From IMG/VR virus record IMGVR_UViG_3300046170_000378, positions 124,001 through 188,000 of that record: 64,000 bases of DNA. One strand, 5' to 3'. This document shows positions 7,551 to 61,416 of the stretch, piece by piece; position 1 is the stretch's first letter; the number at the start of each line of letters is the position of its first letter. The position numbers and the translations under genes are program-made. Below the pieces are notes generated by a model. That model was not told the DNA's origin and did not search any database. It saw nothing but the letters and a program-made list of their open reading frames with translations.

Positions 7551-7602
7551 ATAAAGAATTATCATATTAACAATCAAATGTTAATTATTTTAGATAAAAA
7601 AT

Positions 7603-7629
7603 GAAACCTTTTTTGTTTACATGGTATAA
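7603..7629 (+). promoter_or_regulatory. Putative middle promoter GAAAC-N17-TATAA
   Basis: tGAAACcttttttgtttacatggTATAAt upstream of OMP gene. Confidence 0.6.
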
Positions 7630-8246: not shown

Positions 8247-8249
8247 ATT

Positions 8250-8277
8250 GAAACATTTTAATAAGACAAAGTATAAT
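8250..8277 (+). promoter_or_regulatory. Putative middle promoter GAAAC-N18-TATAA
   Basis: Upstream of clamp and polymerase C-subunit. Confidence 0.6.
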
Positions 8278-9051: not shown

Positions 9052-9053
9052 GT

Positions 9054-10262
9054 ATGAACATCGAAGCGCTAGAAAATAAATCTATCGAGGAATTGACTGA
9101 TAATGAGGCGAAGCTGCTTGTAGATCACTACAAGCAGCTTTCAGCCAAATATACAGCATATGAACAAGCAGTTAAGTTAACACTAAACTCGATCTACGGA
9201 GCCTTCGGTAATAAGTGGTTCCACTTTTTTAATATTGACATTGCCGAGTCAATTACAAAACAAGGCAAAAATGCAATTCTCTACTCAGAAACAATTCTTA
9301 ATAAATATGTTAATGAGTTTTGGCACAAAGACACAGCAGTCCACGCACATTTCGGTATCAAAGTAAAGGGTAAAATTGAAAAACCTGCAGTAATTTATAT
9401 TGATACAGATTCATGTTACGTACAGTTTCAGGATTTGTATGAATCAATAATTTGGCCAGAAGAAACCGAGAAGATGGAAATTGATGTGTTTATTTTAGCA
9501 CTTTATGGATTTAGGCTTAAAGATTATATAGCTAAATGTATGGAGAAGTATGCAGAAAAAAGAAACACAGATAATTATTTAATATTCGAACTAGAGGCGC
9601 TCGCGTACAATGGTATTTGGATGTCCAAGAAAAAGTATATTCAAAACATAGCATGGGACGATAAGTTAGAAATTACAGATCGTCACAAATCATTGAAGAA
9701 AATTAAGACAATTGGATTTGATACGATTCAATCTTCAACGCCCAAATTTGTTAGAGAAAAACTAGTAGAAGCACTTAAAATTATCTTTAAAAGTAGAGTA
9801 ACTCCAACTGCAGAAGATCTACAAGCATTGGTTGTTTTTATGAAAGAAACCAAGAAACAATTCAAACTGGCAGATATTGATGAGATTTCATTTAATAGAA
9901 GAACCAACAATATCGATAAGTATATTGTAGATGATCAGACAGAATTTCAGATAGGACTAAAATGTCCAGCCAATGTTAAAGCCGCAGGATATTATAACTA
10001 TCTACTAAATAACAATAAAAAGTATAAAAACAAATATAAGGTTATTGGTAACGGTGAAAAGCTAAAGATTTATAACTGTAAATCACCAATATCAGAGGTT
10101 TATGCATATATGCCAAATGAACACCCTTATGAAATTGCTCCAGAAATTGATTACGACACTCAATTTGAAAAAGCAATGATTGATCCTCTTAATAGAGTAT
10201 TGACAGCAATTGGTCTACAAACACTAGACACTAATCTAATTTACGCATCGTCGTTATTTTAA
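9054..10262 (+). CDS. Family B DNA polymerase, C-terminal subunit (gp43B-like: motifs B and C, thumb)
   Basis: KLTLNSIYGAFGN (motif B), YIDTDS (motif C), KKKY. Confidence 0.92.
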   Translation: MNIEALENKSIEELTDNEAKLLVDHYKQLSAKYTAYEQAVKLTLNSIYGAFGNKWFHFFNIDIAESITKQGKNAILYSETILNKYVNEFWHKDTAVHAHFGIKVKGKIEKPAVIYIDTDSCYVQFQDLYESIIWPEETEKMEIDVFILALYGFRLKDYIAKCMEKYAEKRNTDNYLIFELEALAYNGIWMSKKKYIQNIAWDDKLEITDRHKSLKKIKTIGFDTIQSSTPKFVREKLVEALKIIFKSRVTPTAEDLQALVVFMKETKKQFKLADIDEISFNRRTNNIDKYIVDDQTEFQIGLKCPANVKAAGYYNYLLNNNKKYKNKYKVIGNGEKLKIYNCKSPISEVYAYMPNEHPYEIAPEIDYDTQFEKAMIDPLNRVLTAIGLQTLDTNLIYASSLF

Positions 10263-10651: not shown

Positions 10652-10656
10652 ATTTA

Positions 10657-10683
10657 GAAACAAACGAAGTTATAGTGATATAA
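10657..10683 (+). promoter_or_regulatory. Putative middle promoter GAAAC-N17-TATAA
   Basis: Upstream of uvsX. Confidence 0.6.
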
Positions 10684-19543: not shown

Positions 19544-19567
19544 ACTAATCTAATATAATTAATACTT

Positions 19568-19598
19568 AAGCCCGTTTGGAAACAAATGGGCTTTTTTT
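19568..19598 (+). terminator. Rho-independent terminator overlapping a middle promoter
   Basis: AAGCCCGTTTG-GAAA-CAAATGGGCTTTTTTT. Confidence 0.75.
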
Positions 19599-19605
19599 CG
19601 TATAA
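19579..19605 (+). promoter_or_regulatory. Putative middle promoter GAAAC-N17-TATAA
   Basis: Upstream of gp55-like sigma. Confidence 0.6.
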
Positions 19606-19626: not shown

Positions 19627-20004
19627 GTGGCTAGAAAGAAAAATTACCTCAACAATAAAGATCTTTACAACGCAATCGTAGAATCTAAAGATCAAGATAA
19701 ATTGACACCTACTGCAGAGAAAATGTTAATGTTACTCGCAGAAAGAGCAATAAATAAATTAACGTATGTAAATAATGATGACAGAGATGACTGTTTACAA
19801 TTTGCAATGTTAGATTTACTAAAATACTGGCGTAATTTCAACCCAAAGTATACCAATGCATTTGCGTATTTTACAGAGATAGCAAAGAGAGGATATGCTA
19901 AGGGGTGGAATAAAATACACCCTCAAAAATATAAAAATACGCTTTCAATGGATAAGATTTCATCTAAAGATTCTAGCGGCGAAAGTGGAATGTTCAATAT
20001 ATAA
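19627..20004 (+). CDS. Late-transcription sigma factor (gp55-like)
   Basis: NYLNNKDL...RDDCLQFAMLDLLKYWRNFNPKYTNAFAYFTEI. Confidence 0.85.
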   Translation: MARKKNYLNNKDLYNAIVESKDQDKLTPTAEKMLMLLAERAINKLTYVNNDDRDDCLQFAMLDLLKYWRNFNPKYTNAFAYFTEIAKRGYAKGWNKIHPQKYKNTLSMDKISSKDSSGESGMFNI

Positions 20005-21074: not shown

Positions 21075-21082
21075 GATATATA
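21075..21082 (+). promoter_or_regulatory. Putative late promoter GATATATA
   Basis: Upstream of portal. Confidence 0.6.
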
Positions 21083-21105
21083 AAACATAACATAAATTAA
21101 AAAGT

Positions 21106-29231: not shown

Positions 29232-29738
29232 TTAAAGAGAGCGCCTAGCGTTCTTTTTAGCCAACTTAAGAAACTCCTCTCGTTCTGCGAGCAGGAGTTT
29301 TTTACATTCCTTGCGAAACTCAATTGAAGATTTAAGTATACGACTGTCAATCATAGGAGCGTCTAAAACATCTAAGTATTCTGGATGAATAAAGTTTTCT
29401 AGATCAAAGTTCATAAATTTGGCCTTAATTGGTTTTAAGCTTATTGCACATAACCAATCTACACTATTATAAGAAGCGTGTAAAGTGTCAATATCAACGA
29501 CCTCGTTAGTACTATGATCCCAATATAATTTTAAACTACTTGCAGATTTACTACTGGTTCTGTGCATTCTCAGAATGCAGCCCATAAATTGATCACTATC
29601 TGACCATGTTTTAATATGTCTGTGTTCTATTAAGAATTTTCGATGATTCTTTTTTAGACAACCTAAAATTATCCCATGTCTATTCCTAGGATTTGGACCA
29701 TTTGTTCTTATTATTTGTATGTCAACCTTTCTAGCCAT
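29232..29738 (-). CDS. Hypothetical basic protein; the only credible minus-strand gene
   Basis: 168-aa ORF filling the gap between + strand genes; AT-rich leader. Confidence 0.65.
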   Translation of the reverse strand: MARKVDIQIIRTNGPNPRNRHGIILGCLKKNHRKFLIEHRHIKTWSDSDQFMGCILRMHRTSSKSASSLKLYWDHSTNEVVDIDTLHASYNSVDWLCAISLKPIKAKFMNFDLENFIHPEYLDVLDAPMIDSRILKSSIEFRKECKKLLLAEREEFLKLAKKNARRSL

Positions 29739-29755
29739 ATATTATATTTATCTTT

Positions 29756-29783
29756 GAAACTTTAACGCCTTGTGTGTGTATAA
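29756..29783 (+). promoter_or_regulatory. Putative middle promoter GAAAC-N18-TATAA
   Basis: Upstream of clamp loader. Confidence 0.6.
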
Positions 29784-29800: not shown

Positions 29801-30760
29801 ATGCAGTCAATAAATCAACTCTTTACAGAGAAGTATCGTCCAAAAAATTTAGATGATTTGATTTTGCCAGATAGAGTCATGGCAAAATTTAAAGATGGAT
29901 TAGTCCAAAACATGTTGTTATCAGGGTTCACCAGGAACTGGTAAAACTTCATGTGCAAAAGCAATTGTTAATCAGTTTAAGCTACCATATCTTTATATTA
30001 ATGCGTCTACTGATACTTCAGTTGATGTTATTAGAACTAAGATTATAGATTTCTGTTCAACTGTGTCTATTATGGATGCACCTGGAATGTTCAAAGTAGT
30101 AATACTAGATGAGGTTGATGGAGTATCAGATCAATTCTTTAAAGCTTTGCGTGCAACAATGGAACAATTTGCTAGTAATTCTAGATTTATTGCAACATGT
30201 AATTACATTAACAAGCTACCAGATCCAATTCTTTCAAGATTTGAAGTTATTAATTTTGACTTTGATAAAGAAGAAGAATCAGAATTGACAAAGAAGTATA
30301 TTAAGCGAGTATACCAGATATGTGGTGATGAAGGTATGACAATTGAAAAACCAGCATTGGTTGAATTTGTTAGACGTAATTTTCCAGATTTAAGATCAAC
30401 TCTAAATAAGTTACAAGGGCTATAAAACACAAGGAACTTCTAATATTACAGTAGAAGATGTTAAGAAATTTAATTCTGTTTACAAAGATGTATTTGAACT
30501 TGTATTTAATGAGACAGATCCAGCTAAGAATTATCAACTTCTAGTTAGTAATTATGGTAATAAAGGTAGATGACATATTACAAACTTTAGGTGAAGAATT
30601 TGTTGAATATATACAACAAGAGAAATTACAACATATTAAACACATCCCTCAAATTATCATTACTGTTGCAAAACACCAAGCGCAACGAGTACATGTTATT
30701 GATCCAGTGATTACAATGTTAAGTTGTGTGTATGAAATACAATCTATTGTTAACTCTTAA
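29801..30760 (+). CDS. Clamp loader large subunit (gp44/RFC-like); three apparent indels
   Basis: EKYRP, GSPGTGKT, ILDEVD, TCNY, ILSRF, FPDLR. Confidence 0.9.
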
Positions 30761-30780
30761 AAAATAAGTTAGTATAAATT

Positions 30781-35413: not shown

Positions 35414-36080
35414 ATGAGCGAAGACAAAAAGAAAAGCATTTCGGATCAAGCTGATGAAATCAGAAAAGAATTAGATGCTTTAATAGGTGAAAATCAAATG
35501 GATGTAGAAACAGATCCGACCGATTTACCAATGATACAGAGAGAAACTAGTTTAGCTCCTGTAAATTATACCGAATTAAAATCAAGTGCTGCTAAAAAAG
35601 CAACAAAAACTATTACGTCCCTGATGAAGTTTTATCTCGATGCAGATATTATTGAAAAGGACGAATATATTCAAGCAAAAAAGAAAATGGATGAAATGAC
35701 AATGTCGTCATTGATCTATCAACTACAGGCAGGCGAAAGAGCACTTACAACACTATTAGAAACTATAGATTCTGGAGAATTGGCACCAAGGATGTTCGAA
35801 GTACTTGCAACTCTACAGAAATCAATGTTAGATATTATTAAATCTCAGACCATGTATTTAATGGCTGCAGAAGAATCTACTAAAAGAATAGCCAGAGATA
35901 TTGAGATTTATAGAAAAAGAGATGATGTTGCAGAAATTGAAGCAGCCGGTGGAGATTCATCAGAAAGAAATGTACAAAGAGGGTACAAAAGATTTAATGG
36001 CTGCAATTCAAGCAGGTATTAATCAAACAAAAGAAGAAGATATAGAAGACGTCGATATAGAAGAGTCTGACGAAGAATAA
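35414..36080 (+). CDS. Terminase small subunit (gp16-like); one apparent indel at ~35980
   Basis: DSGELAPRMFEVLATL parallels gp16 HPRAYEV; RGTKDL parallels GST.EL; directly upstream of large subunit. Confidence 0.6.
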
Positions 36081-37913
36081 TGAGCGATTACGTAGGAGAC
36101 AATAAATGGATACCAAAAGAAGACACTGCACAAGCAGCTTCTGATAGGATTGTTTGGTCTACTAAACAAGTAGACGATCTTATGCTTGCACTTGATCAAG
36201 GGTACAGGCCAAAGGTTGCAATGCCATTTTATGAAGGTAAACAGTTTCTACGTAAAGGTAATATTGTATTTGAATACACAGATGAAGAAATTACTGAATT
36301 AGCTAGATGTGCTCAAGACATCGTTTACTTTGCAGAAAAATATGCAGTAGTAATGACAGATGATGGTATTCAACAAGTAAAACTTAGAGAATATCAAAAA
36401 AGAATGTTGAGAAACTTTCAAAATGAAAGATTTAACATTGTTCTTGCATCTCGACAAATGGGTAAAACAGTAACTGCATCAATATTTAATGCGTGGTATG
36501 TTACTTTTAACACAGACAAAAATACACTTTTATTAGCTAATAAATCTGACTCGACAAAGGAAATTATAGATAAAGCAAAAGGTTGTAGTTGAAAATTTAC
36601 CATTCTTCATGAAGCCTGGTATTATCAAATATGACGTGATGAACGTGAGATGTGATAATGGTTGTCGATTAATAGGACAATCAACTACAGCAAAATCAGG
36701 TATTGGTTTTACAATTCACAACCTATACTTAGATGAGTTTGCCCACATTCACCCATCGATAGCCGATACTTTTTATGAAAATGTATATCCAACGCTATCG
36801 TCTTCTAAAGTTTCTAGAATTACTATTACTTCTACACCAAACGGATTTAATAAATTTTATAATATTTATGCCGCTGCAGAACGAGGTGATAACGAATACC
36901 ATGCAATGCGTATTGATTGGTGGGAACACCCAGACAGAGATGACGCATGGTATGAAAGAGAGCTGGCAAATTTAGGTACTATTGAGGCATTTAATAAACA
37001 ATATGGAAATGAATTTGTTTCGTCTTCAAACCTACTTCTAGATCCAGTCGATATGAAGAAAATGCGTAAGCGTATGAAAAAATATATTCATAACGAGTTT
37101 GATCAATTTGATTACATTAGTATTGATGTAAAAGACTATTTAACATGGGACCCTGAATTTGATATTGAAACATGTAAAGATGGTGGCAATTTTTGGTTAT
37201 TTTCGGTAGATATAGCAGAAGGAAATGGAGGTGATTATTCAGTGATTAATATTTTTAAAATAGATCACATGAATGAACAAGAAATAAAAAACGTTGTAAA
37301 TCCTGGAGCGATGTATGATTTCTTTAAATTTAAACAAGTTGCAGTCTTTAGGTCTAACGAACATGTTATTGAAGATTTTGCTAAAATACTATATACACTA
37401 AGCGTTGATATTTTCAATCCAGAGAATGTTAAGATGGTAGTAGAATACAACACATATGGTACTGTACTTTTCCAATACTTAGGAACTGTGTTTCCGCAAA
37501 GAAACGATTTTGATGAAGAGATGATTGTTAGATTTAAGCACAGACATGATAGTAAAACACTAAAACCAGGAATAAAATTAAAAACAGATAATAAAGCAAT
37601 ATTTTGTCAGAATTTTGCAAAATTATACAAGATAAATAGATTAGATTTGACAGATGAATCAACGATAGTAGAAGCTAGTTTGTTTGGTACATTAAGAAAT
37701 GGAAGTTACGGAGCTCAAATGGGAAATGACGATACCATTATGACAGCGATTACCGGAACAGAATTTTTTAATACCACAGACTATGCAGATTATATTGAGG
37801 AACTCTTAGATGTCATTGACCCTGATGTCCACGATGCAATGGAAAGAATCTTATTTAAAGATAACTCTGAGCAAGGGGATTTACAGTTTGACATTTATGA
37901 TCTGCTTAAATAA
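36080..37913 (+). CDS. Terminase large subunit (gp17); one apparent indel at ~36580
   Basis: SRQMGKT, LYLDEFA, ITSTPNG, SVDIAEGNGGDYS, NDDTIM. Confidence 0.92.
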
Positions 37914-37971: not shown

Positions 37972-40848
37972 ATGGCATTAAGTCCTCAATTACAACAGTT
38001 CAAAAGCTCAGGCGTATATCGTCTAGAGTTTGACAAATCACAAACTGTTAACATTCCAGCTGAAACTATTAGATTAGTTGTAGGTAGATCTAAAAAAGGT
38101 CCTTACAATACTCCAGTATTCATTGAAGATGTTGAACAGTTTACACAAGTTTTTGGCGGTGTAGATAAGTCTTTAGAAAAGAAAGGAATGTTTTTCCACA
38201 GATCTGCAATCGAAACTCTATCAAGAGGCCCAATCTTGGCACTAAACTTAACTGAAGCGGATATAGCTGACAAAGTAGCAATTGTATCTCCTTCAACTAA
38301 TTCTAGTCAAGAAGGCGGAACGGCAATAAACTTAGAAGCACAATATAGCGCAGTTTTCGATACAGATAAATTCTGGAATCCAGCTGACTATAAATTATTA
38401 GCTGCTGCAAATAATGAAGAAGAGACTTCTGATAACGCAATTTCATTTGTAAATATCAAGCAAGATCCTATTACTATCATTATTAGACAAGCTGCTAACA
38501 CTGAAGGTTTCAACTTAACAGCAAGAGAATGGTACGGAGAAGCTAACATTCCAGAAGGAATCGAAGAATTAGAATACGTATCTGACTACATGGTAGATGT
38601 AATGATCTTTAAAGGTAAGTTTGATGCAGCTGCATTAAACAATGACCCAACATATGGTGAAATGTTTGAACAAAGCGGTCTTAAAAGATCTGAGCTTTCA
38701 AAATTTGCTGCACTAAGAGAAGTTACTTTATTAGCACAATACACTGGATCACTTATTCCTGACTTTATGGATAATGAAGGTCGTCAATTATACATTGAGA
38801 CTTTAATTAATCTTGAAGCTAGAAGAACTGGTTTATTCTGTGCAATTAATGAAGAAGCATTAGAAAGAATCGATCTAGTAGGTAAAAACTTTAATATCTA
38901 CCAAGATTATCAAGTACTTTCACACAGAGTTGACCAAACTGTAACATCAGATGACGTTGCATTTGGTAAAGTAATGATCGTTGATGGTAATGAATTAGAA
39001 GTAGCTGATTTATCTGCTGCAGAATTAGCACTATTATCAACTCCAGTTGTACCTGGTAAATTCTTAAACTCATCAGTTTCAGGAGAATGGTTACAAATCT
39101 CATCTGTTGAAAACAGAGTAGACGGATCTGGCAACATTATAGGTTCTACTATTAAAACCTGAAGAAGGTACTTTTGACAAAGTTGAATACGAAGCATATG
39201 ACAGTGACGCTGCAAATGTTGCACCAGGCTACATGGGTAAGCAGGCGTAGATATTACAGTTGATGTTGATGGTTCTCTTATCATATCAAGTAACGCATGG
39301 ACACAAGGTCAAGTATTAGAAGGAAACTTCTTACCAAGTGCATCTAATGGTGAATTTGTTGCTATTTCAGCAGTTGATGTTAATTATGGTCAAGACGGAG
39401 ATCAAATTAGAATCGCACCTGCAGGTGGAGAAGCATTCTCTGCATCTTTCAACGGCTTAACAGGTATTACTACATTACAAGCTTCAGTTAGAAAAGCAAC
39501 CGAAACAGGCATTAGTATCTGTAGGTTGATCCTAACGACAGAGCGGTATTATTACCAAACGTTGGTTCAGGATGGAGCTTTGATGATATGGGTGCAGGTA
39601 AAATTATTTACTCTTACACTGGTACAGAACTAGATCCATTTAACTGGGCAGACGTTAAGGTTGGAATGTACATTCCTACTAAAAGCGGAAACTTAGCTAA
39701 AATTCAAAGAAAAGTAAAAGTTGTAGATGGTACAACTACTAAATATGAATTCCAAGTTCATAGAGATGTTGAGAACGAAAGACCTGGACATGCTCTTAAG
39801 AGATACGAAGAATCTACTGAACTTTATACAATGTTCCCATTAAATGGCGCAACACATACGCCTAAGAAAATTGCAGAATTAATGGCAGCAATTAAGCCAG
39901 GTACTGGTTTAGGTAATGCATTAGTAGACAAAGATAACATTACATTTAGATATGTTGTTGATACCTTTTGGATCATTAGAAGATGGTACTATCTTAAATA
40001 AAGAAGAATTAACACTTCTTTGTAAAGAAAGACAAAACGCATCAGCTATCCTAAATGCACCAATGGTAAAAGAATTGAAGAAATCAACAAATCCTTCATT
40101 CTTAAATACTTTATCTGGAGCATTTGATGTTAACACAATAGCAACTGGTGGTAATTTAGATTTAAATCCATCATTATTGTATACACTACCTTCAATCAAC
40201 GAAGGTGCTAACTACGGATTCTACTATGGTCCTGGTTTAAATGTACTTGAGAACGGTAAAACGTTGGTAATTCCACCAGCAGGTTACGTATCTAACAACT
40301 ACATTGATAAGTATACAAGTGCTTTACCATGGTCAATCATCGCAGGACCAAGAAGAGGTGTTGTTGGTGGTACAGGTGTACAAAGTGTTGAATTTGCATT
40401 CGATAAGAATGACAGAGATGTACTTGAGCCATTTGGTTACAACCCAATCGTATTCGAAAGAGGCGTTGGTCTTACAATCAAAGGTAACAAAACTGCACAA
40501 CAAGGAATTCAATCAGCATTATCTTCTGCACACGTTAGAGAAGCAATGATCTACATCGAAGATGGTTTAGCTGAGATATTGAAGAACTACTTGTTCGAGT
40601 TTAATACTGCTCAAACTAGATTAGAGATTAAAACTTTAGCAGACAACTTTATGGAGTCAGTTAAGAAAGATCAAGGTGTTTACGATTACAGAAACATCAT
40701 GGACGGAACTAACAACACTAACGAAGTTATTGACAACAACATGGGTATTTTAGATACTTACGTTGAGCCAGTTAAAGGTCTTGAAATCTTAGTATCGAGA
40801 GTAACAATCTTGAATACAGGAGAAATCGCAACAGGTAACTTTGCATAA
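37972..40848 (+). CDS. Contractile tail sheath protein (gp18-like, ~950 aa); several apparent indels between ~39150 and ~39970
   Basis: SSGVYRLEFD, VVGRSKKGPYNTPV, PWSIIAGPRRG, GYNPI, KGNKT, HVREAM, FEFNTAQTR. Confidence 0.88.
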
Positions 40849-46955: not shown

Positions 46956-46970
46956 TAAATAATTTATTTT

Positions 46971-46998
46971 GAAACCTTTTATACACGACGCGGTATAA
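46971..46998 (+). promoter_or_regulatory. Putative middle promoter GAAAC-N18-TATAA
   Basis: Upstream of KTSC gene. Confidence 0.6.
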
Positions 46999-50290: not shown

Positions 50291-51580
50291 ATGACAGATT
50301 TTCAACTTATTGCAGATTTCGTTGAAGCATCAAATGCTACGAACTCTAATTCAGATAAACTAGAAGTTATCAAAGAATATACTCAGTATGATATTGTGTG
50401 TAAGGCACTTAATTATACTTACGACACATTTAAACAATATGGCGTAACTTCTGCTAATTGTAAGAAAAATTCAGATTTGGTAAGTCCTTACCACCAATTT
50501 GAAGACTTTTTCTTGTTGTTAGATTATCTAAACGATAGAACTCTTACGGGCCACGATGCAATTAAATCAGTTAACCGATATGTGTCAGATAATCCGCTTT
50601 ATGCAGATCTTATTTGGAATATTATCGATCGTAACTTGAAGACTAGATCTACTGCATCTATGATCAATAAAGTAAAACCTGGCCTAATTCCTACATTTGA
50701 TGTGGCACTCGCTCAAGCATATGACGAGAAGACTAAGAAAAAGGTAGATTGGAATGATGGTTGGTATGCAAGTCGTAAACTTGATGGAGTTAGGTGTCTT
50801 GGTGTTATTGATGATAAAGGTAAAGTTAAATTTTACTCAAGACAAGGTAAAGAGTTTTTGACTCTTGACAATCTTAAGCCATCGATTGAGAAGCTTGGCC
50901 TAACTAACATGGTTTTTGACGGAGAAGTTTGTGTAGTAGATGAAAATGGTAATGAAGATTTTCAAGGTATTATTAAAGAGATCAAACGAAAAGATCATAC
51001 TATTGAAAAGCCATTCTATTATATCTTTGATTTATTGACTTCTAAAGATTTTGCAGATAAAGAATCTATCACTACACTTTCTGAAAGACTTGAAACTGCA
51101 AGAGCATATGTAATGAATGACGATTACATTGGAGTTTTAAAACAAATTTTGGCAGATGACATGGTAATGGAAACTATGATGGAAAAGTCAAAGCGTGAAG
51201 GTTGGGAAGGTCTTATGTTGCGTAAAGATACAACTTACAAAGGTAAGCGTTCTAATGATGTTCTTAAAGTTAAGAAATTCTTTGATGATGAGTATGTAGT
51301 TGTCGATCTAGAAAACGATACACATCGTGTTATTGTCGATGGCACAGAGGTTGAAGAAGTAATGTTGAAGAATGTTATTATTGAACACAAAGGAAATCGC
51401 GTACAAGTCGGCAGTGGCTTTAATCATGAGCAGCGTAGATACTATTTCCAAAATCCTAATCAGATTTTAGGAAAACAAATCACAGTTCAATACTTTGAAG
51501 AAACAACAAATATGAATGGAACTCACTCACTAAGATTTCCAGTAATTAAAGCGGTGTATGAAACACCAAGAGACATTTAA
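50291..51580 (+). CDS. ATP-dependent DNA ligase (gp30-like)
   Basis: RKLDGVR, VFDGE, EGLMLRK, LKVKKF, SLRFP. Confidence 0.93.
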   Translation: MTDFQLIADFVEASNATNSNSDKLEVIKEYTQYDIVCKALNYTYDTFKQYGVTSANCKKNSDLVSPYHQFEDFFLLLDYLNDRTLTGHDAIKSVNRYVSDNPLYADLIWNIIDRNLKTRSTASMINKVKPGLIPTFDVALAQAYDEKTKKKVDWNDGWYASRKLDGVRCLGVIDDKGKVKFYSRQGKEFLTLDNLKPSIEKLGLTNMVFDGEVCVVDENGNEDFQGIIKEIKRKDHTIEKPFYYIFDLLTSKDFADKESITTLSERLETARAYVMNDDYIGVLKQILADDMVMETMMEKSKREGWEGLMLRKDTTYKGKRSNDVLKVKKFFDDEYVVVDLENDTHRVIVDGTEVEEVMLKNVIIEHKGNRVQVGSGFNHEQRRYYFQNPNQILGKQITVQYFEETTNMNGTHSLRFPVIKAVYETPRDI

Positions 51581-51591
51581 ATATAAATAAT

Positions 51592-54930: not shown

Positions 54931-55689
54931 ATGAAGTTCGACAAGATCTACGTATTAGCAATAAATCATACACAAGAGAAAATTGATTCTATTGTAAAAA
55001 AATTATCTGCATTAGAAACAGATGGTGTAACTAACTATGAGATTTTGGTCGGACACAATGGTTGGCAAGAAGAGCTACCTGAAGGTGCAAAAATATATGA
55101 GAATTGGGGTCAACCTGAAAGTTGGAATGATTTTTGGAAAAAGGATGTTCAACCCGGAGAAGTTGGCTGTACATTAAGTCACATCTCCGCTTGGAATAAA
55201 ATAGTAGAAGACGGAGTTTCAAGAGCATTAATTCTAGAAGAGGACTTTGTACCCAAATTACCACTTTTAGAATTGCCAGAACCCGATGAGAATTGGCCAT
55301 ATAAATGGGACTATCTAAATCTAGGCCGATATATTTTTAATAAGGAAAATGACATCATGATCAACGATGCATATTGTATCCCATCTTTACACTATAACAT
55401 GCACGCATATGTGCTGACCAACATAGGAGCTCAAAAATTAGTAGATTATAATTTACAAAAAAATATATTCATTAATGACGAGTTTATAACGGCGACATAT
55501 ATGAATCACAGGAGATCAGATATAGAAGAATTATATCCAATTAAAAATATTAATGCATTAGCAACAAACAAAAATTGGATAGGTCAAAACTCTAACGCAG
55601 AAACTACAATGGTGAGTGGACACACTAAAACATTTGAAAATCCAAATAGAGAAAGCCTGTTAAAGGCAAACGAAAAAGAAACAAAATAA
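54931..55689 (+). CDS. Glycosyltransferase family 25
   Basis: IYVLAIN, GEVGCTLSH, ALILEEDF, HAYVLT..GAQKL. Confidence 0.8.
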   Translation: MKFDKIYVLAINHTQEKIDSIVKKLSALETDGVTNYEILVGHNGWQEELPEGAKIYENWGQPESWNDFWKKDVQPGEVGCTLSHISAWNKIVEDGVSRALILEEDFVPKLPLLELPEPDENWPYKWDYLNLGRYIFNKENDIMINDAYCIPSLHYNMHAYVLTNIGAQKLVDYNLQKNIFINDEFITATYMNHRRSDIEELYPIKNINALATNKNWIGQNSNAETTMVSGHTKTFENPNRESLLKANEKETK

Positions 55690-55709
55690 ACACATTACGT
55701 ATAAGTTAT

Positions 55710-56771: not shown

Positions 56772-57308
56772 ATGAAACAAGCTAGTAAAAGTCAGAAAAG
56801 AATAGACTTCTTAGACTTAGTCACAGAAGCTATTACTCACGAAGACATCTTCGGAACAATTGACTACAAGAACAAAAGCGAAGACAAAATCATACAATTC
56901 ATTTATCCACACCTTGTGAGTTCCTTAACAGAATATGTTATGGAAACACAGGGCAAGGATAAGGATTCTGCCAAAGACTTCGTTAAGAAAAACCTTAAAT
57001 GGGAAGGTAATGTTAATACAACAGTAAACCACATTCTATTTATGGGTACTCAAAATAGACCAGATATGGTCTTAGAGATTAACGGTTTAAAGATTGGTAT
57101 TGAATTTAAAAGAGGTCAAAAAGGATCAGAATTAAGAAGTGGTATTGGACAATCTATGGTCTATGCAACACATTATGATTTTGTACTCTACTTATTTGTT
57201 GATACTAGTGATGATAGTCGTATTAAGAATGCCCAAACGGGTGTAAATGAAACCGAATTCATAGATAATCTGTGGAATCAATATAACATAAAATTTATAG
57301 TAGCTTAA
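56772..57308 (+). CDS. Putative PD-(D/E)XK (restriction-endonuclease-like) nuclease
   Basis: NRPDMVL...IGIEFKRG...GIGQSMVY. Confidence 0.6.
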   Translation: MKQASKSQKRIDFLDLVTEAITHEDIFGTIDYKNKSEDKIIQFIYPHLVSSLTEYVMETQGKDKDSAKDFVKKNLKWEGNVNTTVNHILFMGTQNRPDMVLEINGLKIGIEFKRGQKGSELRSGIGQSMVYATHYDFVLYLFVDTSDDSRIKNAQTGVNETEFIDNLWNQYNIKFIVA

Positions 57309-57826
57309 TGGCAATATTTGTAACATCCAATCTCCAGCTCGGAAGACCTGGTGCAATCAAAAAATATAATAGGAATTACGACAACGTTGATCAAATGACA
57401 GAAGATCTTATTCTGAAGTGGAACGAAGTCGTAAAACAAGAGGATACCGTATATCATTTAGGTAATTTTGCTTGGGATCCAAAGACTGCACAAGATGCAC
57501 TATTGCGTCTTAATGGTAGAATTTATTTTACAAGGGGTGATCACGATAAAGCTTTAGAAGTTTTAGACGAAAAGGGAATGCTTAGAAATAGAGTACAGAT
57601 GATTGATTGTCTTACTACCCTACCAGAACTCAATCTTAGTTTAACATATTGGCCATTAAAAGCGTGGCCTAATAAAAGAGGTAAAAAAGCATATAACATT
57701 ATAGGTTATCCTGAAAAGAAATTTAAATCAGATCCAAAAGAAAGAATCATTAATGTTTCTACTGATTTATGGAAGAACCAACCACAAGACCTTAATAAAT
57801 TATTAGAAATATTTTCAGATTTCTAA
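57308..57826 (+). CDS. Calcineurin-like metallophosphoesterase homolog with substituted metal ligands
   Basis: TSNLQLG, WNEVV..EDTVYHLGNF, LNG....RGDHD. Confidence 0.7.
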   Translation: MAIFVTSNLQLGRPGAIKKYNRNYDNVDQMTEDLILKWNEVVKQEDTVYHLGNFAWDPKTAQDALLRLNGRIYFTRGDHDKALEVLDEKGMLRNRVQMIDCLTTLPELNLSLTYWPLKAWPNKRGKKAYNIIGYPEKKFKSDPKERIINVSTDLWKNQPQDLNKLLEIFSDF

Positions 57827-58158: not shown

Positions 58159-58196
58159 CCCAGATTTTTTTATGTCAAAAAGATTTGGTATATTAG
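58159..58196 (+). promoter_or_regulatory. Putative early promoter CCCAGATTTTTTTATGTC-N9-TGGTATATTAG
   Basis: Upstream of ECF sigma gene. Confidence 0.6.
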
Positions 58197-58224
58197 CCTA
58201 GTAATAATTAAAAAAAGAAAACAT

Positions 58225-58836
58225 ATGTCAAAATCAAAAGAGTTAAGCTACCGTCAGCTATCAGAGAATTTCATCAATTCTAAATCAGAAAAAGATTATA
58301 ATGCGCTTTACGTTCGTGTGAAGCCAGGTTTGAAAAACTACATTCATAATGTGGTCAAAGATAATGAAGCTACAGATGATATTTTGACAAATACTCTTAC
58401 GAAGATGTGGACCAAGATAGATCAATATGATCCTAAATATCAAATCACTACATGGCTTTATCGTATTGCCTTTAATGAATGTCTTGGTTGGATTCGTCAA
58501 CGTAATCGTAAATATAGCATCGATGCAATGAAAGAATATGGTATTGAAATCTCAGAACACTATTCTCATACATCAGCTCATGATCTTCTTATTGAGATTG
58601 AGAGTAAAACCGAAGCAGATTTTATTGAAGAAGACGAAGCACTTATGAATTCTTATGAATTGGCACTAAAAGCAATTCAAGATCTAAAGCCAATGTATCG
58701 AGATATTATCGAAGATCGTCTACTTAACAACATGAAATACGAAGATATTGCATCAAAGTATGGTGTGCCTCTTCAAACTGTTAAGAATCGTATCCGTAGG
58801 GGTAAGATTTTGATTCAAGAATCAATGACAAAATAA
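58225..58836 (+). CDS. ECF-type (RpoE-like) sigma-70 factor
   Basis: Region 2 DDILTNT..KMW.KIDQYD...TTWLYRIAFN; region 4 L...YR.II......MKYEDIA...GVPLQTVKNRIRRG. Confidence 0.9.
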   Translation: MSKSKELSYRQLSENFINSKSEKDYNALYVRVKPGLKNYIHNVVKDNEATDDILTNTLTKMWTKIDQYDPKYQITTWLYRIAFNECLGWIRQRNRKYSIDAMKEYGIEISEHYSHTSAHDLLIEIESKTEADFIEEDEALMNSYELALKAIQDLKPMYRDIIEDRLLNNMKYEDIASKYGVPLQTVKNRIRRGKILIQESMTK

Positions 58837-58850
58837 ATATCCCACCAATT

Positions 58851-58877
58851 GAAACCTTGCAAATAGCGCAAGTATAA
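58851..58877 (+). promoter_or_regulatory. Putative middle promoter GAAAC-N17-TATAA
   Basis: Upstream of tRNA cluster. Confidence 0.6.
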
Positions 58878-58940
58878 AGATAGCAATCAGCAACGGCAGA
58901 TTGAATGAAGAGCGAATTTGAAATGTAGATAGAAATCAAT

Positions 58941-59029
58941 GCCGGAATGGTGGAATTGGTAGACACGAGGGACTTAAAATCCCTTGGGCAGTAATGCCCG
59001 TGACGGTTCGAGCCCGTCTTCCGGTACCA
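58941..59029 (+). tRNA. tRNA-Leu(UAA), CCA encoded
   Basis: Cloverleaf; AGGGA-CTTAAAA-TCCCT; long variable arm. Confidence 0.92.
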
Positions 59030-59090
59030 AGCAGGGAGTTATACAATACATGTTGGAACTATATAACTTTAAAATAGAACCCTGCGATAT

Positions 59091-59164
59091 GGACCAGTAG
59101 CTCAGCTGGATAGAGCATCTGCCTTCTAAGCAGACGGTCACAGGTTCGAATCCTGTCTGGTTCA
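59091..59164 (+). tRNA. tRNA-Arg(UCU)
   Basis: TCTGC-CTTCTAA-GCAGA; GGTTCGAATCC. Confidence 0.92.
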
Positions 59165-59172
59165 CTAAATAT

Positions 59173-59288
59173 GGGGAGTTAGTCAAATAGGTACGACGCT
59201 CCAGCTATAAGGCCGAAAACATCATACTAGTTACGAGGTGTGATTAGGCTTGTTGGCAGAAGTAGGGGTTCGAATCCCCTACTCCCCC
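59173..59288 (+). ncRNA. tRNA-like RNA with canonical acceptor, D and T arms but a ~66-nt extended central hairpin
   Basis: GGGGAGT/ACTCCCC, GTC/GAC D-stem with GG loop, AGGGG-TTCGAAT-CCCCT. Confidence 0.6.
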
Positions 59289-59389
59289 GCTCTTAGATAG
59301 GTTTAACAACCGAACAACGAGGCGTCAAATCTCACGCCTACAAGTCGAAAGACGGAGTCTAAGTGGAGTAATTTAAATATATAAACCTC

Positions 59390-59477
59390 GGAGAGGTGGC
59401 AGAGTGGTCGAATGCACTGGTCTTGAAAACCAGCGTACAGCAATGTACCGGGGGTTCGAATCCCTCCCTCTCCGCCA
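59390..59477 (+). tRNA. tRNA-Ser(UGA), CCA encoded
   Basis: CTGGT-CTTGAAA-ACCAG; long variable arm. Confidence 0.92.
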
Positions 59478-59479
59478 TT

Positions 59480-59556
59480 GGTCTGGTAGTTCAGTTGGTT
59501 AGAATACTTGCCTGTCACGCAAGGGGTCGCGAGTTCGAGTCTCGTCCAGACCGCCA
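59480..59556 (+). tRNA. tRNA-Asp(GUC), CCA encoded
   Basis: CTTGC-CTGTCAC-GCAAG. Confidence 0.92.
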
Positions 59557-59574
59557 AAAAGAAAGAGAGAGAGT

Positions 59575-60000
59575 ATGAGGTTGTTGGTGGCACTTCTTTT
59601 TAGTACAATGATGTGGGCACAAGATTGTTCACCATATCATAAGGTTGATAAGTGGGAAGTAAATGATGATGTAGATTTTACTGCAGCTTGGGTTAGTTGT
59701 TTCCACGCATCTGGCTTAGCGTTTTCAATGGATTATAACAACATCTCTTTAGGAACTCATCTGATGGGCGAAGGCCATATGAATTCTGCATACGTGTTCT
59801 TGAGCTATCAATATCAACCACTCGATAGAATTAAATTATCTGCTGGACCTCTGTATAAATTAAATAACAATAGTGGCTTAATGGTTGCACAATATGGTGG
59901 AGATATTAAGTTATATAAATCTATCTGGCTCACGAGTAGAATTTTGCAAATTAGAACAGATTTAAATTATCTTAACGTAGGACTTAAAATTGTGCTATAA
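59575..60000 (+). CDS. Secreted/possible outer-membrane beta-barrel protein
   Basis: Short signal MRLLVALLFSTMMWA; amphipathic strands; C-terminal LNVGLKIVL. Confidence 0.5.
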   Translation: MRLLVALLFSTMMWAQDCSPYHKVDKWEVNDDVDFTAAWVSCFHASGLAFSMDYNNISLGTHLMGEGHMNSAYVFLSYQYQPLDRIKLSAGPLYKLNNNSGLMVAQYGGDIKLYKSIWLTSRILQIRTDLNYLNVGLKIVL

Positions 60001-60003
60001 TTG

Positions 60004-60011
60004 GATATATA
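60004..60011 (+). promoter_or_regulatory. Putative late promoter GATATATA
   Basis: Upstream of 60032 ORF. Confidence 0.5.
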
Positions 60012-60031
60012 AAATAAATATATGTCCTTAA

Positions 60032-60490
60032 ATGTCATTCACAGAATTCAAAAATAAATTCGGTAACGTTATTTTTACAGTTACTGCTATTGGTGCATTG
60101 GTTACATTAATTGGTTACATTAGCCCAATTGTTGACTATGCGTCTGACCTTAATAAATTAGTTAATGAGTACGAGCAAATTCATAAATCTATGCAGAGAA
60201 TAGAAACTCACATAGATCAATATGAAAGTGACAGAACTAATAAGAAGAAAACCTTCTCTATCGGACTTAGATCTGATACTGAAAATGGACAAATGATCTA
60301 TGTAGATGAGAACAATGGAATCTATAGAGCGTTTCTAGACCCTAAAACTAAAGAATATTTTTATTATGATTCCGATGGACATCCGGTCTATTGTTATTCA
60401 CAAAGAAAGGTTAATGGCGAAAAAGATCATATAGAAATTAAGCCTCTAGTTCTACCTGAAATTATTATCCTTACAGACTCTATCCAATAA
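60032..60490 (+). CDS. Membrane-anchored coiled-coil protein, late (possible lysis accessory)
   Basis: N-terminal TM helix followed by coiled coil. Confidence 0.5.
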   Translation: MSFTEFKNKFGNVIFTVTAIGALVTLIGYISPIVDYASDLNKLVNEYEQIHKSMQRIETHIDQYESDRTNKKKTFSIGLRSDTENGQMIYVDENNGIYRAFLDPKTKEYFYYDSDGHPVYCYSQRKVNGEKDHIEIKPLVLPEIIILTDSIQ

Positions 60491-60673
60491 ATCAAATGAA
60501 ACAGTATTATACTGTATTGTATAAGTATTGGCTGTCAGTCAAGCTTTAGAGAGGTAGTGAAGCTGTAGTTAAGAAGTAGAGTGTATTAATTGTCGAAAAA
60601 GGGTTTATAGTAGACAGGCGTTACTCATTGCACTTAACCAGAAACCCCGAAAGACCCGAAGCCTCTCTAATTT

Positions 60674-60745
60674 GCTCCGTTCGTCTAACGGTTAGGACAT
60701 TAGGTTTTCATCCTAAAAATAGGAGTTCGATTCTCCTACGGAGTA
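60674..60745 (+). tRNA. tRNA-Glu(UUC)
   Basis: TTAGG-TTTTCAT-CCTAA. Confidence 0.9.
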
Positions 60746-60777
60746 CAATTATATAGCAAGTTTATATAAGTAAACAA

Positions 60778-60850
60778 TGTCCCTTGGTGTAATTGGCAAC
60801 ACGTCTGGTTTTGGTCCAGAAGAGTATAGGTTCGACCCCTGTAGGGACAA
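60778..60850 (+). tRNA. tRNA-Gln(UUG)
   Basis: TCTGG-TTTTGGT-CCAGA. Confidence 0.9.
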
Positions 60851-60858
60851 CAATTTTT

Positions 60859-60933
60859 CGGGGTGTAGCGTAGCCCGGTTATCGCGCCACGTTTGGGACG
60901 TGGAGGCCGCAGGTTCGAATCCTGCCACCCCGA
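60859..60933 (+). tRNA. tRNA-Pro(UGG)
   Basis: CCACG-TTTGGGA-CGTGG. Confidence 0.92.
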
Positions 60934-60953
60934 CATTTTAACACCATTTCACT

Positions 60954-60980
60954 GAAACCTTTCAAATCAGCTTAATATAA
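60954..60980 (+). promoter_or_regulatory. Putative middle promoter GAAAC-N17-TATAA
   Basis: Upstream of the Ile/Lys/Leu tRNA sub-cluster. Confidence 0.6.
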
Positions 60981-61087
60981 CTATCAAATCTAACAAACCT
61001 AGATTTTAAAAGTTATTTGACTTGCTAAACAAATAGATCATAGATCGAGTCTTGCACCTCTACATAGATTATAGGTGTTTTCAACAT

Positions 61088-61164
61088 GGGGATGTAGCTC
61101 AGTTGGTTAGAGCAGGACTCTTATATAGTCAAGGTCGTGGGTTCGAGCCCCGCCATCCCTACCA
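61088..61164 (+). tRNA. tRNA-Ile(UAU), CCA encoded
   Basis: GACT-CTTATAT-AGTC anticodon arm, anticodon TAT. Confidence 0.8.
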
Positions 61165-61185
61165 AAGGCAACTATGATTTATTAA

Positions 61186-61258
61186 GATCTCTTAGCTCAG
61201 TTGGTAGAGCATCACACTTTTAATGTGAGGGTCCAGGGTTCGAGCCCCTGAGGGATCA
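61186..61258 (+). tRNA. tRNA-Lys(UUU)
   Basis: TCACA-CTTTTAA-TGTGA. Confidence 0.92.
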
Positions 61259-61261
61259 CTT

Positions 61262-61343
61262 GCGGATGTGGTGAAATTGGTAGACACGCTAGTTTTAGGC
61301 ACTAGTGCTTTATAGCTTGAAGGTTCGAGTCCTTTCATCCGCA
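61262..61343 (+). tRNA. tRNA-Leu(UAG)
   Basis: CTAGT-TTTAGGC-ACTAG; variable arm. Confidence 0.9.
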
Positions 61344-61408
61344 CGTGTCATGCAAGCGCAAAAGACGGGGTCCCAAACAAAAGACAAGTTTGGGGCCCCG
61401 GTAAGAAT

Positions 61409-61416
61409 GATATATA
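61409..61416 (+). promoter_or_regulatory. Putative late promoter GATATATA
   Basis: Upstream of CCA-adding enzyme. Confidence 0.5.

What the first reader, a model, noticed from the sequence alone, without database searches (positions are those of the whole stretch)
58159..58877. T4-like phage apparently running a two-sigma cascade: ECF sigma for middle genes, gp55 for late genes
Seen: an intact ECF-type sigma gene (58225-58836) sits behind the repeated early-type motif. A motif GAAAC-N17/18-TATAA recurs with tight spacing at 7603, 8250, 10657, 19579, 29756, 46971, 58851 and 60954, with variants at 2497 and 32264. It lies ahead of the polymerase, clamp, uvsX, clamp loader, tRNAs and, crucially, the gp55 late sigma. 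Established: a -35 containing AAC/GAAAC is the hallmark of ECF promoters (e.g. B. subtilis sigW TGAAAC). T4 uses MotA/AsiA for middle transcription, whereas SPO1 uses a sigma cascade. Inference: early promoter -> ECF sigma -> middle genes including gp55 -> late genes, an SPO1-like logic on a T4-like core.
Basis: partly seen in the sequence, partly recalled or inferred. Interest (0 to 1): 0.85.

Follow-up and report, generated by a model that had tools for sequence, protein, structure and literature searches.

The report
Phage sigma factor and its promoters
An uncultured marine T4-like phage, probably of Flavobacteria, carries its own small ECF-type sigma factor and a conserved two-part promoter class ahead of replication genes, tRNAs and the late sigma gp55, which fits a sigma cascade that has not been tested.

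Summary
ORF 58225-58836 is an intact ECF-type sigma factor. It has sigma-2 and sigma-4 domains, passes NCBIfam TIGR02937, and its best sequence and fold matches are SigW and sigmaE.

GAAAC-N17/18-TATAA occurs 11 times, all on the + strand, against about 1 expected. The extended consensus is TGAAAC-N16/17-(A/G)TATAA.

It behaves as a promoter:
- In 29 of 219 unique sites an ATG lies exactly 10 nt after the T of TATAA, which points to leaderless mRNAs.
- It precedes gp55 in 45 of 45 unique relatives and the clamp loader in 39 of 44.
- Across 59 related loci that carry the sigma gene there are 208 hits on the + strand and 1 on the - strand (9.2 and 4.2 expected).

Two other classes exist. A long "early-type" motif sits ahead of the sigma gene, and GATATATA(A/T) sits ahead of structural genes.

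The complete Tenacibaculum phage PTm1 has gp55 but neither the sigma nor the motif. Distant sigma homologues with a different recognition helix (crAss-like, Lak) also lack the motif nearby.

That this sigma reads the GAAAC promoters is inferred, not shown. The -10 lacks the usual ECF CGT, and only 64 of 212 kb was seen. I rate it a new variant of a known kind, the phage sigma cascade.

The parts
58159..58197 (+). 'Early-type' promoter-like motif ahead of the sigma gene: T-run, ATGTCAA, N6, TTGGTATATTAG.
   Evidence: Four more near-identical copies lie at 30773, 48604, 49993 and 57857. The core word occurs 6 times on + and 0 on -, against 0.17 expected; one of the six, at 43814, is a partial match inside a coding region. 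In relatives the TATATT(A/T)(G/A) part is kept ahead of the sigma gene while the upstream half varies.
58225..58836 (+). ECF-type (group 4) sigma factor, 203 aa.
   Evidence: Pfam r2 and r4_2. NCBIfam TIGR02937 scores 72 bits against a cutoff of 42.9. The best PDB sequence match is SigW 5wuq. The AF2 model has pLDDT 83.5, and the top Foldseek hits are all ECF sigmas. More than 1100 homologues were found, essentially all on phage-like contigs.
58850..58877 (+). Middle-type promoter (TGAAAC-N17-GTATAA) directly after the sigma gene, ahead of the first tRNA cluster. Predicted start is near 58883.
   Evidence: A strict motif lies within about 400 nt after the sigma stop codon in 21 of 55 relatives.
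58941..61344 (+). Ten tRNA genes in three clusters. Further middle-type promoters lie at 60497-60524 and 60953-60980.
   Evidence: ARAGORN; motif hits.
19566..19605 (+). Middle-type promoter of gp55, fused to the terminator of the upstream gene. GAAAC forms the top of the hairpin and the T-run is the spacer.
   Evidence: The strict motif is present in 45 of 45 unique relatives. In the hairpin, 8 of 11 pairs show compensatory changes and 93% of cells are paired; 0 of 500 shuffles reached this.
19627..20004 (+). gp55-like late sigma, 125 aa.
   Evidence: phrog_234 'late sigma transcription factor', E 4e-12. A homologue is present in PTm1.
10656..10683 (+). Middle-type promoter ahead of uvsX (10707), followed by the gp41-like helicase and the gp47/gp46-like nuclease genes.
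29755..29783 (+). Middle-type promoter ahead of the clamp-loader gene. The gene is broken in this contig.
   Evidence: The motif lies upstream in 39 of 44 unique relatives, which carry an intact 318-aa ORF.
7602..7629 (+). Middle-type promoter ahead of a short ORF and ORF 7773-8189.
8249..8276 (+). Middle-type promoter, placed after a terminator hairpin. It precedes ORFs 8307 and 8518 and the C-terminal DNA polymerase piece (9036).
46970..46998 (+). Middle-type promoter ahead of the KTSC-domain ORF 47015 and a run of small ORFs.
51559..51586 (+). Middle-type promoter. The ATG at 51592 lies exactly at the predicted +1, so the mRNA would be leaderless.
55677..55704 (+). Middle-type promoter. The ATG of the guanylate-kinase-like gene (55710) lies at the predicted +1. 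It heads the conserved block that runs up to the sigma gene.
21075..21083 (+). Example of the late-type motif GATATATA(A/T), here ahead of the portal gene. Ten other strict copies are at 4469, 17239, 18329, 23129, 25626, 27270, 33353, 37932, 40857 and 60004.
   Evidence: 11 copies on +, 0 on -, against 2.2 expected. They lie ahead of the portal, protease, major capsid, sheath and tube genes.

Best explanation
The window comes from a T4-like myovirus of an abundant, uncultured marine clade whose host is probably in the Flavobacteriaceae. I propose three promoter classes.

1. A host-read class, T-rich followed by TATATT(A/T)(G/A), drives a few genes, including the phage's own ECF-type sigma.
2. 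That sigma joins host core RNA polymerase and reads TGAAAC (-33 to -28), N16/17, (A/G)TATAA (-11 to -6), starting at an A 6 nt after the final A of TATAA. These promoters drive recombination and replication genes, nucleotide metabolism genes, the tRNA clusters and gp55.
3. gp55 then reads the single-element GATATATA(A/T) promoters of the structural genes.

Shown here: the sigma is ECF-type; the three motifs exist; the GAAAC motif behaves as a promoter and is conserved ahead of orthologous genes; the sigma and the motif co-occur.

Inferred: which factor reads which motif, and the order in time.
For: **The motif is real and strand-specific.**
- Window: 11 hits against 0.99 expected.
- 59 sigma-bearing relatives: 208 on + and 1 on -, against 9.2 and 4.2 expected. 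All 59 loci have at least one.

**It behaves as a promoter.**
- The two blocks keep a fixed spacing: N17 in 129 sites and N18 in 42 of the 171 unique sites profiled.
- A Y-A step lies at offsets 9-10.
- An ATG lies at exactly offset 10 in 29 of 219 unique sites, with 0-2 at neighbouring offsets.

**It is conserved ahead of orthologous genes.** It precedes gp55 in 45 of 45 unique relatives and the clamp loader in 39 of 44.

**A two-part motif fits a two-domain sigma.**
- The sigma passes the ECF superfamily model.
- Its nearest solved relative is B. subtilis SigW, whose -35 is TGAAAC (PMC5758882).
- The recognition helices match closely: TVKNRIRRGK in the phage, TVKTRIHRGR in SigW.
- The helix and region 2.4 are invariant across homologues of 53-100% identity, as is the motif.

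**Co-occurrence across outgroups.**
- PTm1 (complete genome, has gp55) has no sigma homologue (best E 0.33) and chance-level motif counts.
- LR756500.1 keeps the helix and shows 4 hits against 0.68 expected.
- The crAss-like and Lak homologues have a different helix and no motif within 20 kb on either side.

**The sigma gene is not behind its own motif in any relative examined**.

**No rival factor was seen in the window.** There was no MotA or AsiA PHROG hit in any of the 92 window ORFs scanned.

**The host is probably Bacteroidota.**
- Only 4 of 61 genes have a Shine-Dalgarno-like word upstream (PMC6847099).
- The only hit among cellular genomes is a contig binned into a Flavobacteriaceae MAG.
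- The primary sigma of that phylum reads TAnnTTTG (PMC9723704), which the GAAAC class does not resemble.
Against: - The -10 element (A/G)TATAA has no CGT, the usual ECF -10 signature, including in flavobacteria (PMC9723704, PMC5758882).
- The sigma gene has no adjacent anti-sigma gene and is not autoregulated, so it is an atypical ECF.
- Only 64 kb (about 69 kb with locus L001) of the 212 kb genome was seen. Another sigma or an activator could be encoded elsewhere.
- The co-occurrence test rests on one distant sigma-less genome. Within the clade, the sigma and the motif could simply share ancestry.
- The canonical Bacteroidota promoter TTG-N17-21-TAnnTTTG is not enriched in the window (3 against 2.9), so even the 'host-read' label of the early-type class is unsure.
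- There are no expression data.
Confidence: 0.6

Rival explanations
1. The GAAAC-N17/18-TATAA sites are real promoters, but something else reads them. Candidates are a host alternative (ECF) sigma, host primary sigma redirected by a phage activator in the manner of MotA/AsiA, or another phage sigma encoded outside the window. The ECF-type sigma would then have a different regulon, possibly host genes.
For: - The -10 lacks the ECF CGT (PMC9723704).
- 148 kb of the genome is unseen.
- Bacteroidota carry many ECF sigmas whose -35 elements also contain AAC. This rests on established knowledge and was not tested here.
- Phage sigmas that act on host programmes are known (PMC9429907).
Against: - No MotA or AsiA family hit in the window.
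- The fixed -35/-10 spacing fits one two-domain sigma better than an activator box.
- The motif is absent from sigma-less PTm1, which infects a Flavobacteriaceae host.
- Host ECF sigmas are normally held by anti-sigmas, which makes them a poor basis for an obligatory phage programme. This is inference.
- The motif is abundant on the phage genome itself.
Confidence: 0.25
2. The assignments are swapped. The sigma is autoregulated, as most ECF sigmas are, and reads the long 'early-type' motif in front of its own gene. The GAAAC class is read by host polymerase.
For: - ECF sigma genes are typically preceded by their own promoter (established knowledge).
- The early-type motif is unusually long and nearly identical in five copies.
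- It does not match the canonical TTG / TAnnTTTG spacing.
Against: - Across relatives the upstream half of that motif changes (ATGTCAA, TTTCCCGTTTAAA, TTTTACCGTTTG), while the sigma's DNA-reading helices are invariant.
- The motif has no AAC at -35.
- Its -10 resembles the Bacteroidota -7 box in 7 of 8 positions.
- A phage sigma that depends only on itself could not be switched on.
- The GAAAC class resembles neither TAnnTTTG nor the words enriched in PTm1 intergenic regions.
Confidence: 0.08
3. The motif is not a promoter. It would instead be an RNA-level or DNA-level signal of another kind, such as a processing site, part of a terminator, or a replication or packaging signal.
For: At gp55 the GAAAC lies in a covarying terminator hairpin. 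Several sites precede tRNA clusters, where processing signals are expected.
Against: - Most sites have no hairpin.
- GAAAC stays invariant even where the closing base pair is lost, in 10 of 30 sequences.
- The spacer sequence is free while its length is fixed.
- An ATG lies at exactly offset 10 in 13% of sites.
- Sites lie 6-45 nt ahead of gene starts and only on the coding strand.
Confidence: 0.04

Closest known systems
Bacillus phage SPO1 sigma cascade (gp28, then gp33/gp34)
   Same: Host sigma transcribes an early phage sigma gene. The phage sigma redirects host core polymerase to middle promoters, and a further phage sigma is made for late genes (PMC13401047 abstract and established knowledge).
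   Different: SPO1 is not T4-like. Its middle promoters are unrelated in sequence. Here the late factor is the T4-type gp55, and the middle factor is a two-domain ECF-like protein of a separate, phage-only family.
T4 middle and late transcription (MotA/AsiA, then gp55/gp33/gp45)
   Same: A T4-like core genome; replication genes and gp55 lie behind a non-early promoter class; there is a single-element A/T-rich late promoter and a gp55 homologue.
   Different: No MotA or AsiA homologue was seen in the window. The middle promoter has a true -35-like element at sigma-type spacing rather than a MotA box, and a complete extra sigma is encoded.
B. subtilis SigW and other ECF sigmas
   Same: The sigma-2 plus sigma-4 architecture and fold; the recognition helix TVKxRIxRG(K/R); the -35 TGAAAC, often followed by a T-tract (PMC5758882).
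   Different: The -10 is (A/G)TATAA, not CGTA. There is no anti-sigma partner and no autoregulation. The linker between domains is about 50 residues long and acidic. The family is phage-encoded.
Sigma factors of Salmonella phage 7-11 (gp47) and phiEco32 (gp36)
   Same: A phage-encoded small sigma that redirects host core polymerase. For gp47 the promoter is bipartite, GTAAtg-N16-aCTA, shown experimentally (PMC8948821).
   Different: Those are podoviruses of enterobacteria. Their sigmas drive late (7-11) or middle and late (phiEco32) genes, and there is no gp55.
RpoE-like sigma of the T4-superfamily rhizobiophages PhiM9 and P10VF; the 'fuller' sigmas of T4-like jumbo phages
   Same: A T4-type phage that carries an ECF-like sigma in addition to gp55 (PMC4621102; PMC7824862).
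   Different: Those sigmas are close to host RpoE. They were suggested as late factors standing in for the missing gp33, and no cognate promoter class was reported. Here the sigma family is phage-specific and a candidate regulon is defined.

Membership tests
ECF (group 4) sigma-70 family | Only sigma-2 and sigma-4 domains; no region 1.1 and no region 3. | tested here: met
   Pfam finds Sigma70_r2 (28-95) and r4_2 (147-194) and nothing else. The AF2 model shows two helical domains joined by a disordered linker.
ECF (group 4) sigma-70 family | Scores above the curated ECF superfamily model. | tested here: met
   TIGR02937 sigma70-ECF scores 72.1 bits against a cutoff of 42.9. No subfamily or equivalog cutoff is reached; the best is TIGR02985, at 80 bits against 126.
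ECF (group 4) sigma-70 family | Fold closest to solved ECF sigmas. | tested here: met
   The top 8 Foldseek PDB hits are sigmaE, M. tuberculosis SigE, AlgU and SigW. The sigma-2 domain superposes on sigmaE region 2 at 2.0 A.
ECF (group 4) sigma-70 family | Cognate anti-sigma factor encoded next to the gene. | tested here: not met
   tRNA genes lie downstream. The gene upstream is a 74-aa protein of unknown function (phrog_1933), present next to the sigma in only some relatives, or otherwise a phosphoesterase. This feature is common but not universal among ECF sigmas.
ECF (group 4) sigma-70 family | Positive autoregulation from its own promoter. | tested here: not met
   No GAAAC-N17/18-TATAA lies directly ahead of the sigma gene in any of about 55 relatives. 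Read-through from the promoter at 55677 remains possible.
ECF (group 4) sigma-70 family | Promoter with AAC in the -35 and CGT in the -10. | tested here: inconclusive
   The candidate regulon has TGAAAC at -35 but (A/G)TATAA at -10. Assigning that regulon to this sigma is itself inferred.
T4-like phages (Straboviridae-type core) | T4 core genes for the head, tail, replication and late transcription. | tested here: met
   The following were found: gp23-like capsid, gp20 portal, gp21 protease, sheath, tube, terminase, gp43 polymerase, gp44 clamp loader, gp41 helicase, gp46/47, UvsX and gp55. The nearest cultured capsid is Tenacibaculum phage PTm1 at 35% identity, so it is a distant ('Far-T4'-grade) member.
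Phage sigma cascade (SPO1-type logic) | The phage sigma gene is read by host polymerase; the phage sigma reads a distinct promoter class that includes the next regulator. | not testable with these tools
   The sequence is compatible with this. The sigma lies behind a different motif, and gp55 lies behind the GAAAC motif in 45 of 45 relatives. Specificity and timing need experiments.
T4 MotA/AsiA middle mode | MotA and AsiA homologues, and a MotA box about 12 nt upstream of the -10. | tested here: not met
   No PHROG hit to either family in the 92 window ORFs scanned. The motif geometry is -35-like. The rest of the genome was not seen.

The most novel reading that the evidence does not exclude
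A globally distributed clade of T4-like phages of marine Flavobacteria has replaced the MotA/AsiA 'sigma appropriation' mode with a self-contained, anti-sigma-free ECF-like sigma. That sigma reads an unusual hybrid promoter, with an ECF -35 TGAAAC and an A/T-only -10. It would be the master switch that turns on replication genes, tRNAs and gp55.

The promoters are built into compact punctuation units. In some the terminator loop is the -35 element. In others the start codon is the +1, giving leaderless mRNA.
Probability: 0.45. Interest if true: 0.7.

Novelty: new variant of a known kind. Interest (0 to 1): 0.6.

Why it matters
T4 is the textbook case of middle-gene control by remodelling host sigma-70. 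How the many T4-like phages without MotA/AsiA time their genes is largely unknown, especially in Bacteroidota, whose primary sigma and translation signals are unusual.

Here a candidate regulator and a candidate regulon are both defined at base resolution. The clade is very large: more than 1100 sigma homologues and about 500 gp55 and clamp-loader loci in public viromes. That makes the question directly testable.

A small sigma without an anti-sigma partner, paired with a well-defined promoter, could also serve as an orthogonal expression part for flavobacteria.

Tried and rejected
- **Nucleotide search (megablast) of the region against GenBank phages.** Only tRNA-sized matches came back; there is no close cultured relative.
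- **E. coli-type promoter scan.** Not enriched: 21 against 23.6 expected.
- **Canonical Bacteroidota promoter TTG-N17-21-TAnnTTTG.** Not enriched: 3 against 2.9. I could not positively tie the early-type motif to host sigma-A.
- **The 43814 'early-type' hit.** It is a partial match inside a coding region and was dropped.
- **The 74-aa gene next to the sigma as an obligatory partner or anti-sigma.** Rejected, because it is adjacent in only a minority of relatives.
- **Search for cellular relatives of the sigma.** One hit, itself a phage-like contig binned into a Flavobacteriaceae MAG.
- **Literature searches for a prior description of this sigma and promoter pair.** They found precedents but not this system.
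- **First k-mer and dyad counts.** They were dominated by a coding tandem repeat, which had to be masked.
- **Not attempted.** I did not walk out to the other 148 kb of the contig, because it would take too many scans. I did not read any broken gene through its stops.

Full report
**What the window is**

The window is 64 kb at 34% G+C, with nearly all genes on the + strand. It lies at positions 124001-188000 of the 212 kb contig IMGVR_UViG_3300046170_000378.

PHROG and Pfam scans find a T4-type core:
- DNA polymerase, in pieces
- ribonucleotide reductase
- UvsX
- gp41-like helicase and gp47/gp46-like nuclease
- gp55 (19627-20004)
- head-completion protein, portal, prohead protease and a gp23-like capsid protein
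- clamp loader, terminase, sheath, tube and ligase

Ten tRNA genes and a CCA-adding enzyme are also present.

The nearest capsid proteins are from an uncultured 462 kb phage, LR756500.1 (50% identity), from the Prevotella Lak phages (about 40% over partial alignments), and from Tenacibaculum phages PTm1/PTm5 (35%), the nearest cultured relatives. This makes it a distant T4 relative.

**The likely host**

Three indirect lines point to a Bacteroidota host, probably in the Flavobacteriaceae:
- Only 4 of 61 genes have a Shine-Dalgarno-like word upstream, and the leaders are A-rich. That pattern is described for this phylum (PMC6847099).
- The only hit among 185,579 representative cellular genomes is a 29 kb contig binned into a Flavobacteriaceae MAG.
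- The short nucleotide (megablast) matches to the tRNA genes come mostly, but not only, from Cellulophaga and Bacteroides phages.

**The sigma gene**

ORF 58225-58836 is intact and encodes 203 aa.
- It has Sigma70_r2 and Sigma70_r4_2 domains and no region 3.
- It passes the NCBIfam ECF superfamily model. It reaches no subfamily cutoff; the best subfamily model is the 'Bacteroides expansion' family.
- Its best solved relative by sequence is B. subtilis SigW.
- An AlphaFold model (pLDDT 83.5) shows two helical domains joined by a roughly 50-residue acidic, partly disordered linker.
- Its best fold matches are all ECF sigmas.

More than 1100 homologues exist, on contigs of up to about 270 kb. Sixty loci were fetched, at 53-100% identity. 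In these the 2.4-like segment YQITTWLYRIAFN and the recognition helix QT(V/I)KNRIRRGK are invariant or nearly so.

The gene sits in a conserved block: guanylate kinase, two unknown genes, a phosphoesterase, then the sigma. The phosphoesterase-sigma pair is kept even in LR756500.1. No anti-sigma gene is adjacent.

**The motif**

GAAAC-N17/18-TATAA occurs 11 times, all on the + strand, against 0.99 expected. An unbiased dyad count recovers it.

From 171 unique sites in the window and the sigma loci, the consensus is T-GAAAC-A-(A/T)-(A/T), then a free spacer, then (A/G, never T)-TATAA. A pyrimidine-A step lies 9-10 nt after the T of TATAA. N17 occurs 129 times and N18 42 times.

**Evidence that it is a promoter**

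- In 219 unique sites an ATG lies at exactly offset 10 in 29 cases, with 0-2 at neighbouring offsets. A second peak falls at offsets 22-28.
- The simplest reading is that transcription starts at offset 10. That gives leaderless mRNAs in about 13% of cases and 12-18 nt leaders in most others.
- Window examples are ATG 51592, ATG 55710, and the variant site ahead of ATG 32296.
- With that start, TGAAAC occupies -33 to -28 and (A/G)TATAA occupies -11 to -6.

**Conservation of the motif**

- 59 of 59 further sigma loci carry it: 208 hits on + and 1 on -, against 9.2 and 4.2 expected.
- It precedes gp55 in 45 of 45 unique relatives.
- It precedes the clamp loader in 39 of 44.

At gp55 the promoter is fused to the terminator of the upstream gene. 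GAAAC forms the top of a hairpin (a G-C closing pair plus a GAAA loop in most sequences), and the T-run is the spacer. Eight of 11 stem pairs show compensatory changes. GAAAC stays invariant even in the 10 of 30 sequences where the closing pair is lost. So its conservation is not explained by the RNA structure.

**Two other promoter-like classes**

- **Early-type.** A 39-nt 'early-type' motif (T-run, ATGTCAA, N6, TTGGTATATTAG) lies ahead of five genes: the sigma, the 74-aa gene before it, a small ORF ahead of the ligase, ORF 48678, and an RNase H-like exonuclease. Ahead of the sigma gene in relatives, the TATATT(A/T)(G/A) part persists while the upstream half changes. This -10 matches the Bacteroidota -7 box TAnnTTTG in 7 of 8 positions (PMC9723704). 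The canonical full consensus is not enriched in the window, however.
- **Late-type.** GATATATA(A/T) occurs 11 times on +, 0 on -, against 2.2 expected. It lies ahead of the portal, protease, capsid, sheath, tube and other genes. It is the analogue of the T4 late TATAAATA element read by gp55.

**Linking the sigma to the GAAAC class**

This link is inference. Six observations support it:
1. A two-block motif at sigma-type spacing fits a two-domain sigma. gp55 has no region 4 and fits the single-block late motif.
2. The -35 is the SigW-type TGAAAC, and the recognition helix is close to that of SigW (PMC5758882).
3. The invariance of the DNA-reading segments matches the invariance of the motif across the clade. 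The early-type motif varies.
4. The outgroups agree.
   - PTm1 (complete genome, Flavobacteriaceae host, gp55 present) has no sigma homologue. It has only 2 motif hits in 225 kb, and its intergenic regions are instead enriched in TAnnTTTG-like words.
   - LR756500.1 keeps the helix and has 4 hits against 0.68 expected in 41 kb.
   - The crAss-like and Lak homologues have different helices and no hits within 20 kb either side of the gene.
5. The sigma gene is never directly behind its own motif, as a cascade requires.
6. No MotA or AsiA family member is found in the window.

**Weaknesses**

- The -10 lacks the CGT of ECF promoters.
- 148 kb of the genome was not examined.
- The single sigma-less outgroup is distant.
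- Within the clade, co-occurrence could reflect common descent.
- Nothing is known about timing.

I put the cascade as stated at about 0.6.

**Comparison with what is known**

The logic is that of SPO1. The core genome and late system are those of T4. The sigma is a member of the ECF group by domain content, model score and fold, although it lacks the usual anti-sigma partner and autoregulation.

Precedents exist for ECF-like sigmas in T4-superfamily phages. PhiM9 and P10VF carry a host-like RpoE that was suggested as a late factor (PMC4621102). A survey of jumbo phages noted 'fuller' sigmas beside gp55 (PMC7824862). Experimentally defined bipartite promoters of a phage sigma are known for phage 7-11 (PMC8948821).

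I found no description of this phage-specific sigma family or of the TGAAAC/TATAA promoter class. I therefore rate it a new variant of a known kind. It is of solid but not extreme interest, and directly testable.

Noticed in passing
window 29801-30760; also 36080-37913, 37972-40848, 5743-7456, 3026-4442: Several essential genes are split across reading frames in this contig: clamp loader, large terminase, tail sheath, RNR large subunit and the N-terminal part of the DNA polymerase. For the clamp loader, relatives 99% identical carry one intact 318-aa ORF, so the breaks look like indel errors of this assembly rather than biology. Intact copies exist. I did not read any of these genes through their stops.
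   Followed up: partly
window 3339-4442 and 9036-10262: The two halves of the family-B DNA polymerase lie 4.6 kb apart, with ribonucleotide reductase genes and two middle-type promoters between them. Tenacibaculum phage PTm1 is annotated with a split, intein-bearing polymerase, so this split may be genuine.
   Followed up: no
window 19566-19600; relatives L061-L140: A terminator-promoter fusion. The hairpin that ends the upstream gene carries the -35 GAAAC at its top (usually a G-C pair plus a GAAA tetraloop), and its T-run serves as the promoter spacer. The stem covaries in 8 of 11 pairs.
   Followed up: yes
window 51592, 55710, 32296; 29 of 219 sites in relatives: The start codon sits exactly at the predicted transcription start, 10 nt after the T of TATAA. 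This implies leaderless mRNAs for a subset of middle genes.
   Followed up: yes
window 28254-28477: A 15-nt tandem array of 14.5 copies at 92% match. It begins inside the end of ORF 27308-28288 and runs past it. It probably encodes, or once encoded, a 5-residue peptide repeat.
   Followed up: no
window 57308-57826 with 58225-58836: A 172-aa metallophosphoesterase-like gene lies directly upstream of the sigma gene in 60 of 62 loci, including the very distant LR756500.1. This is a conserved pair of unknown meaning. The 74-aa gene between them in this window is present there in only some relatives.
   Followed up: partly
window 4469 and 61409: Late-type motifs also lie ahead of the RNR small subunit gene (strict match at 4469) and ahead of the CCA-adding enzyme gene (a looser match at 61409, GATATATAG). 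Neither is a structural gene.
   Followed up: no
window 29232-29738, minus strand: This is the only convincing minus-strand gene (168 aa, no family hit). It diverges from the clamp-loader promoter region.
   Followed up: no
whole window, upstream of 61 genes: Shine-Dalgarno-like words are almost absent (4 of 61 genes), and leaders are A-rich with G depleted at -14 to -11. This is the translation-initiation style described for Bacteroidota.
   Followed up: yes
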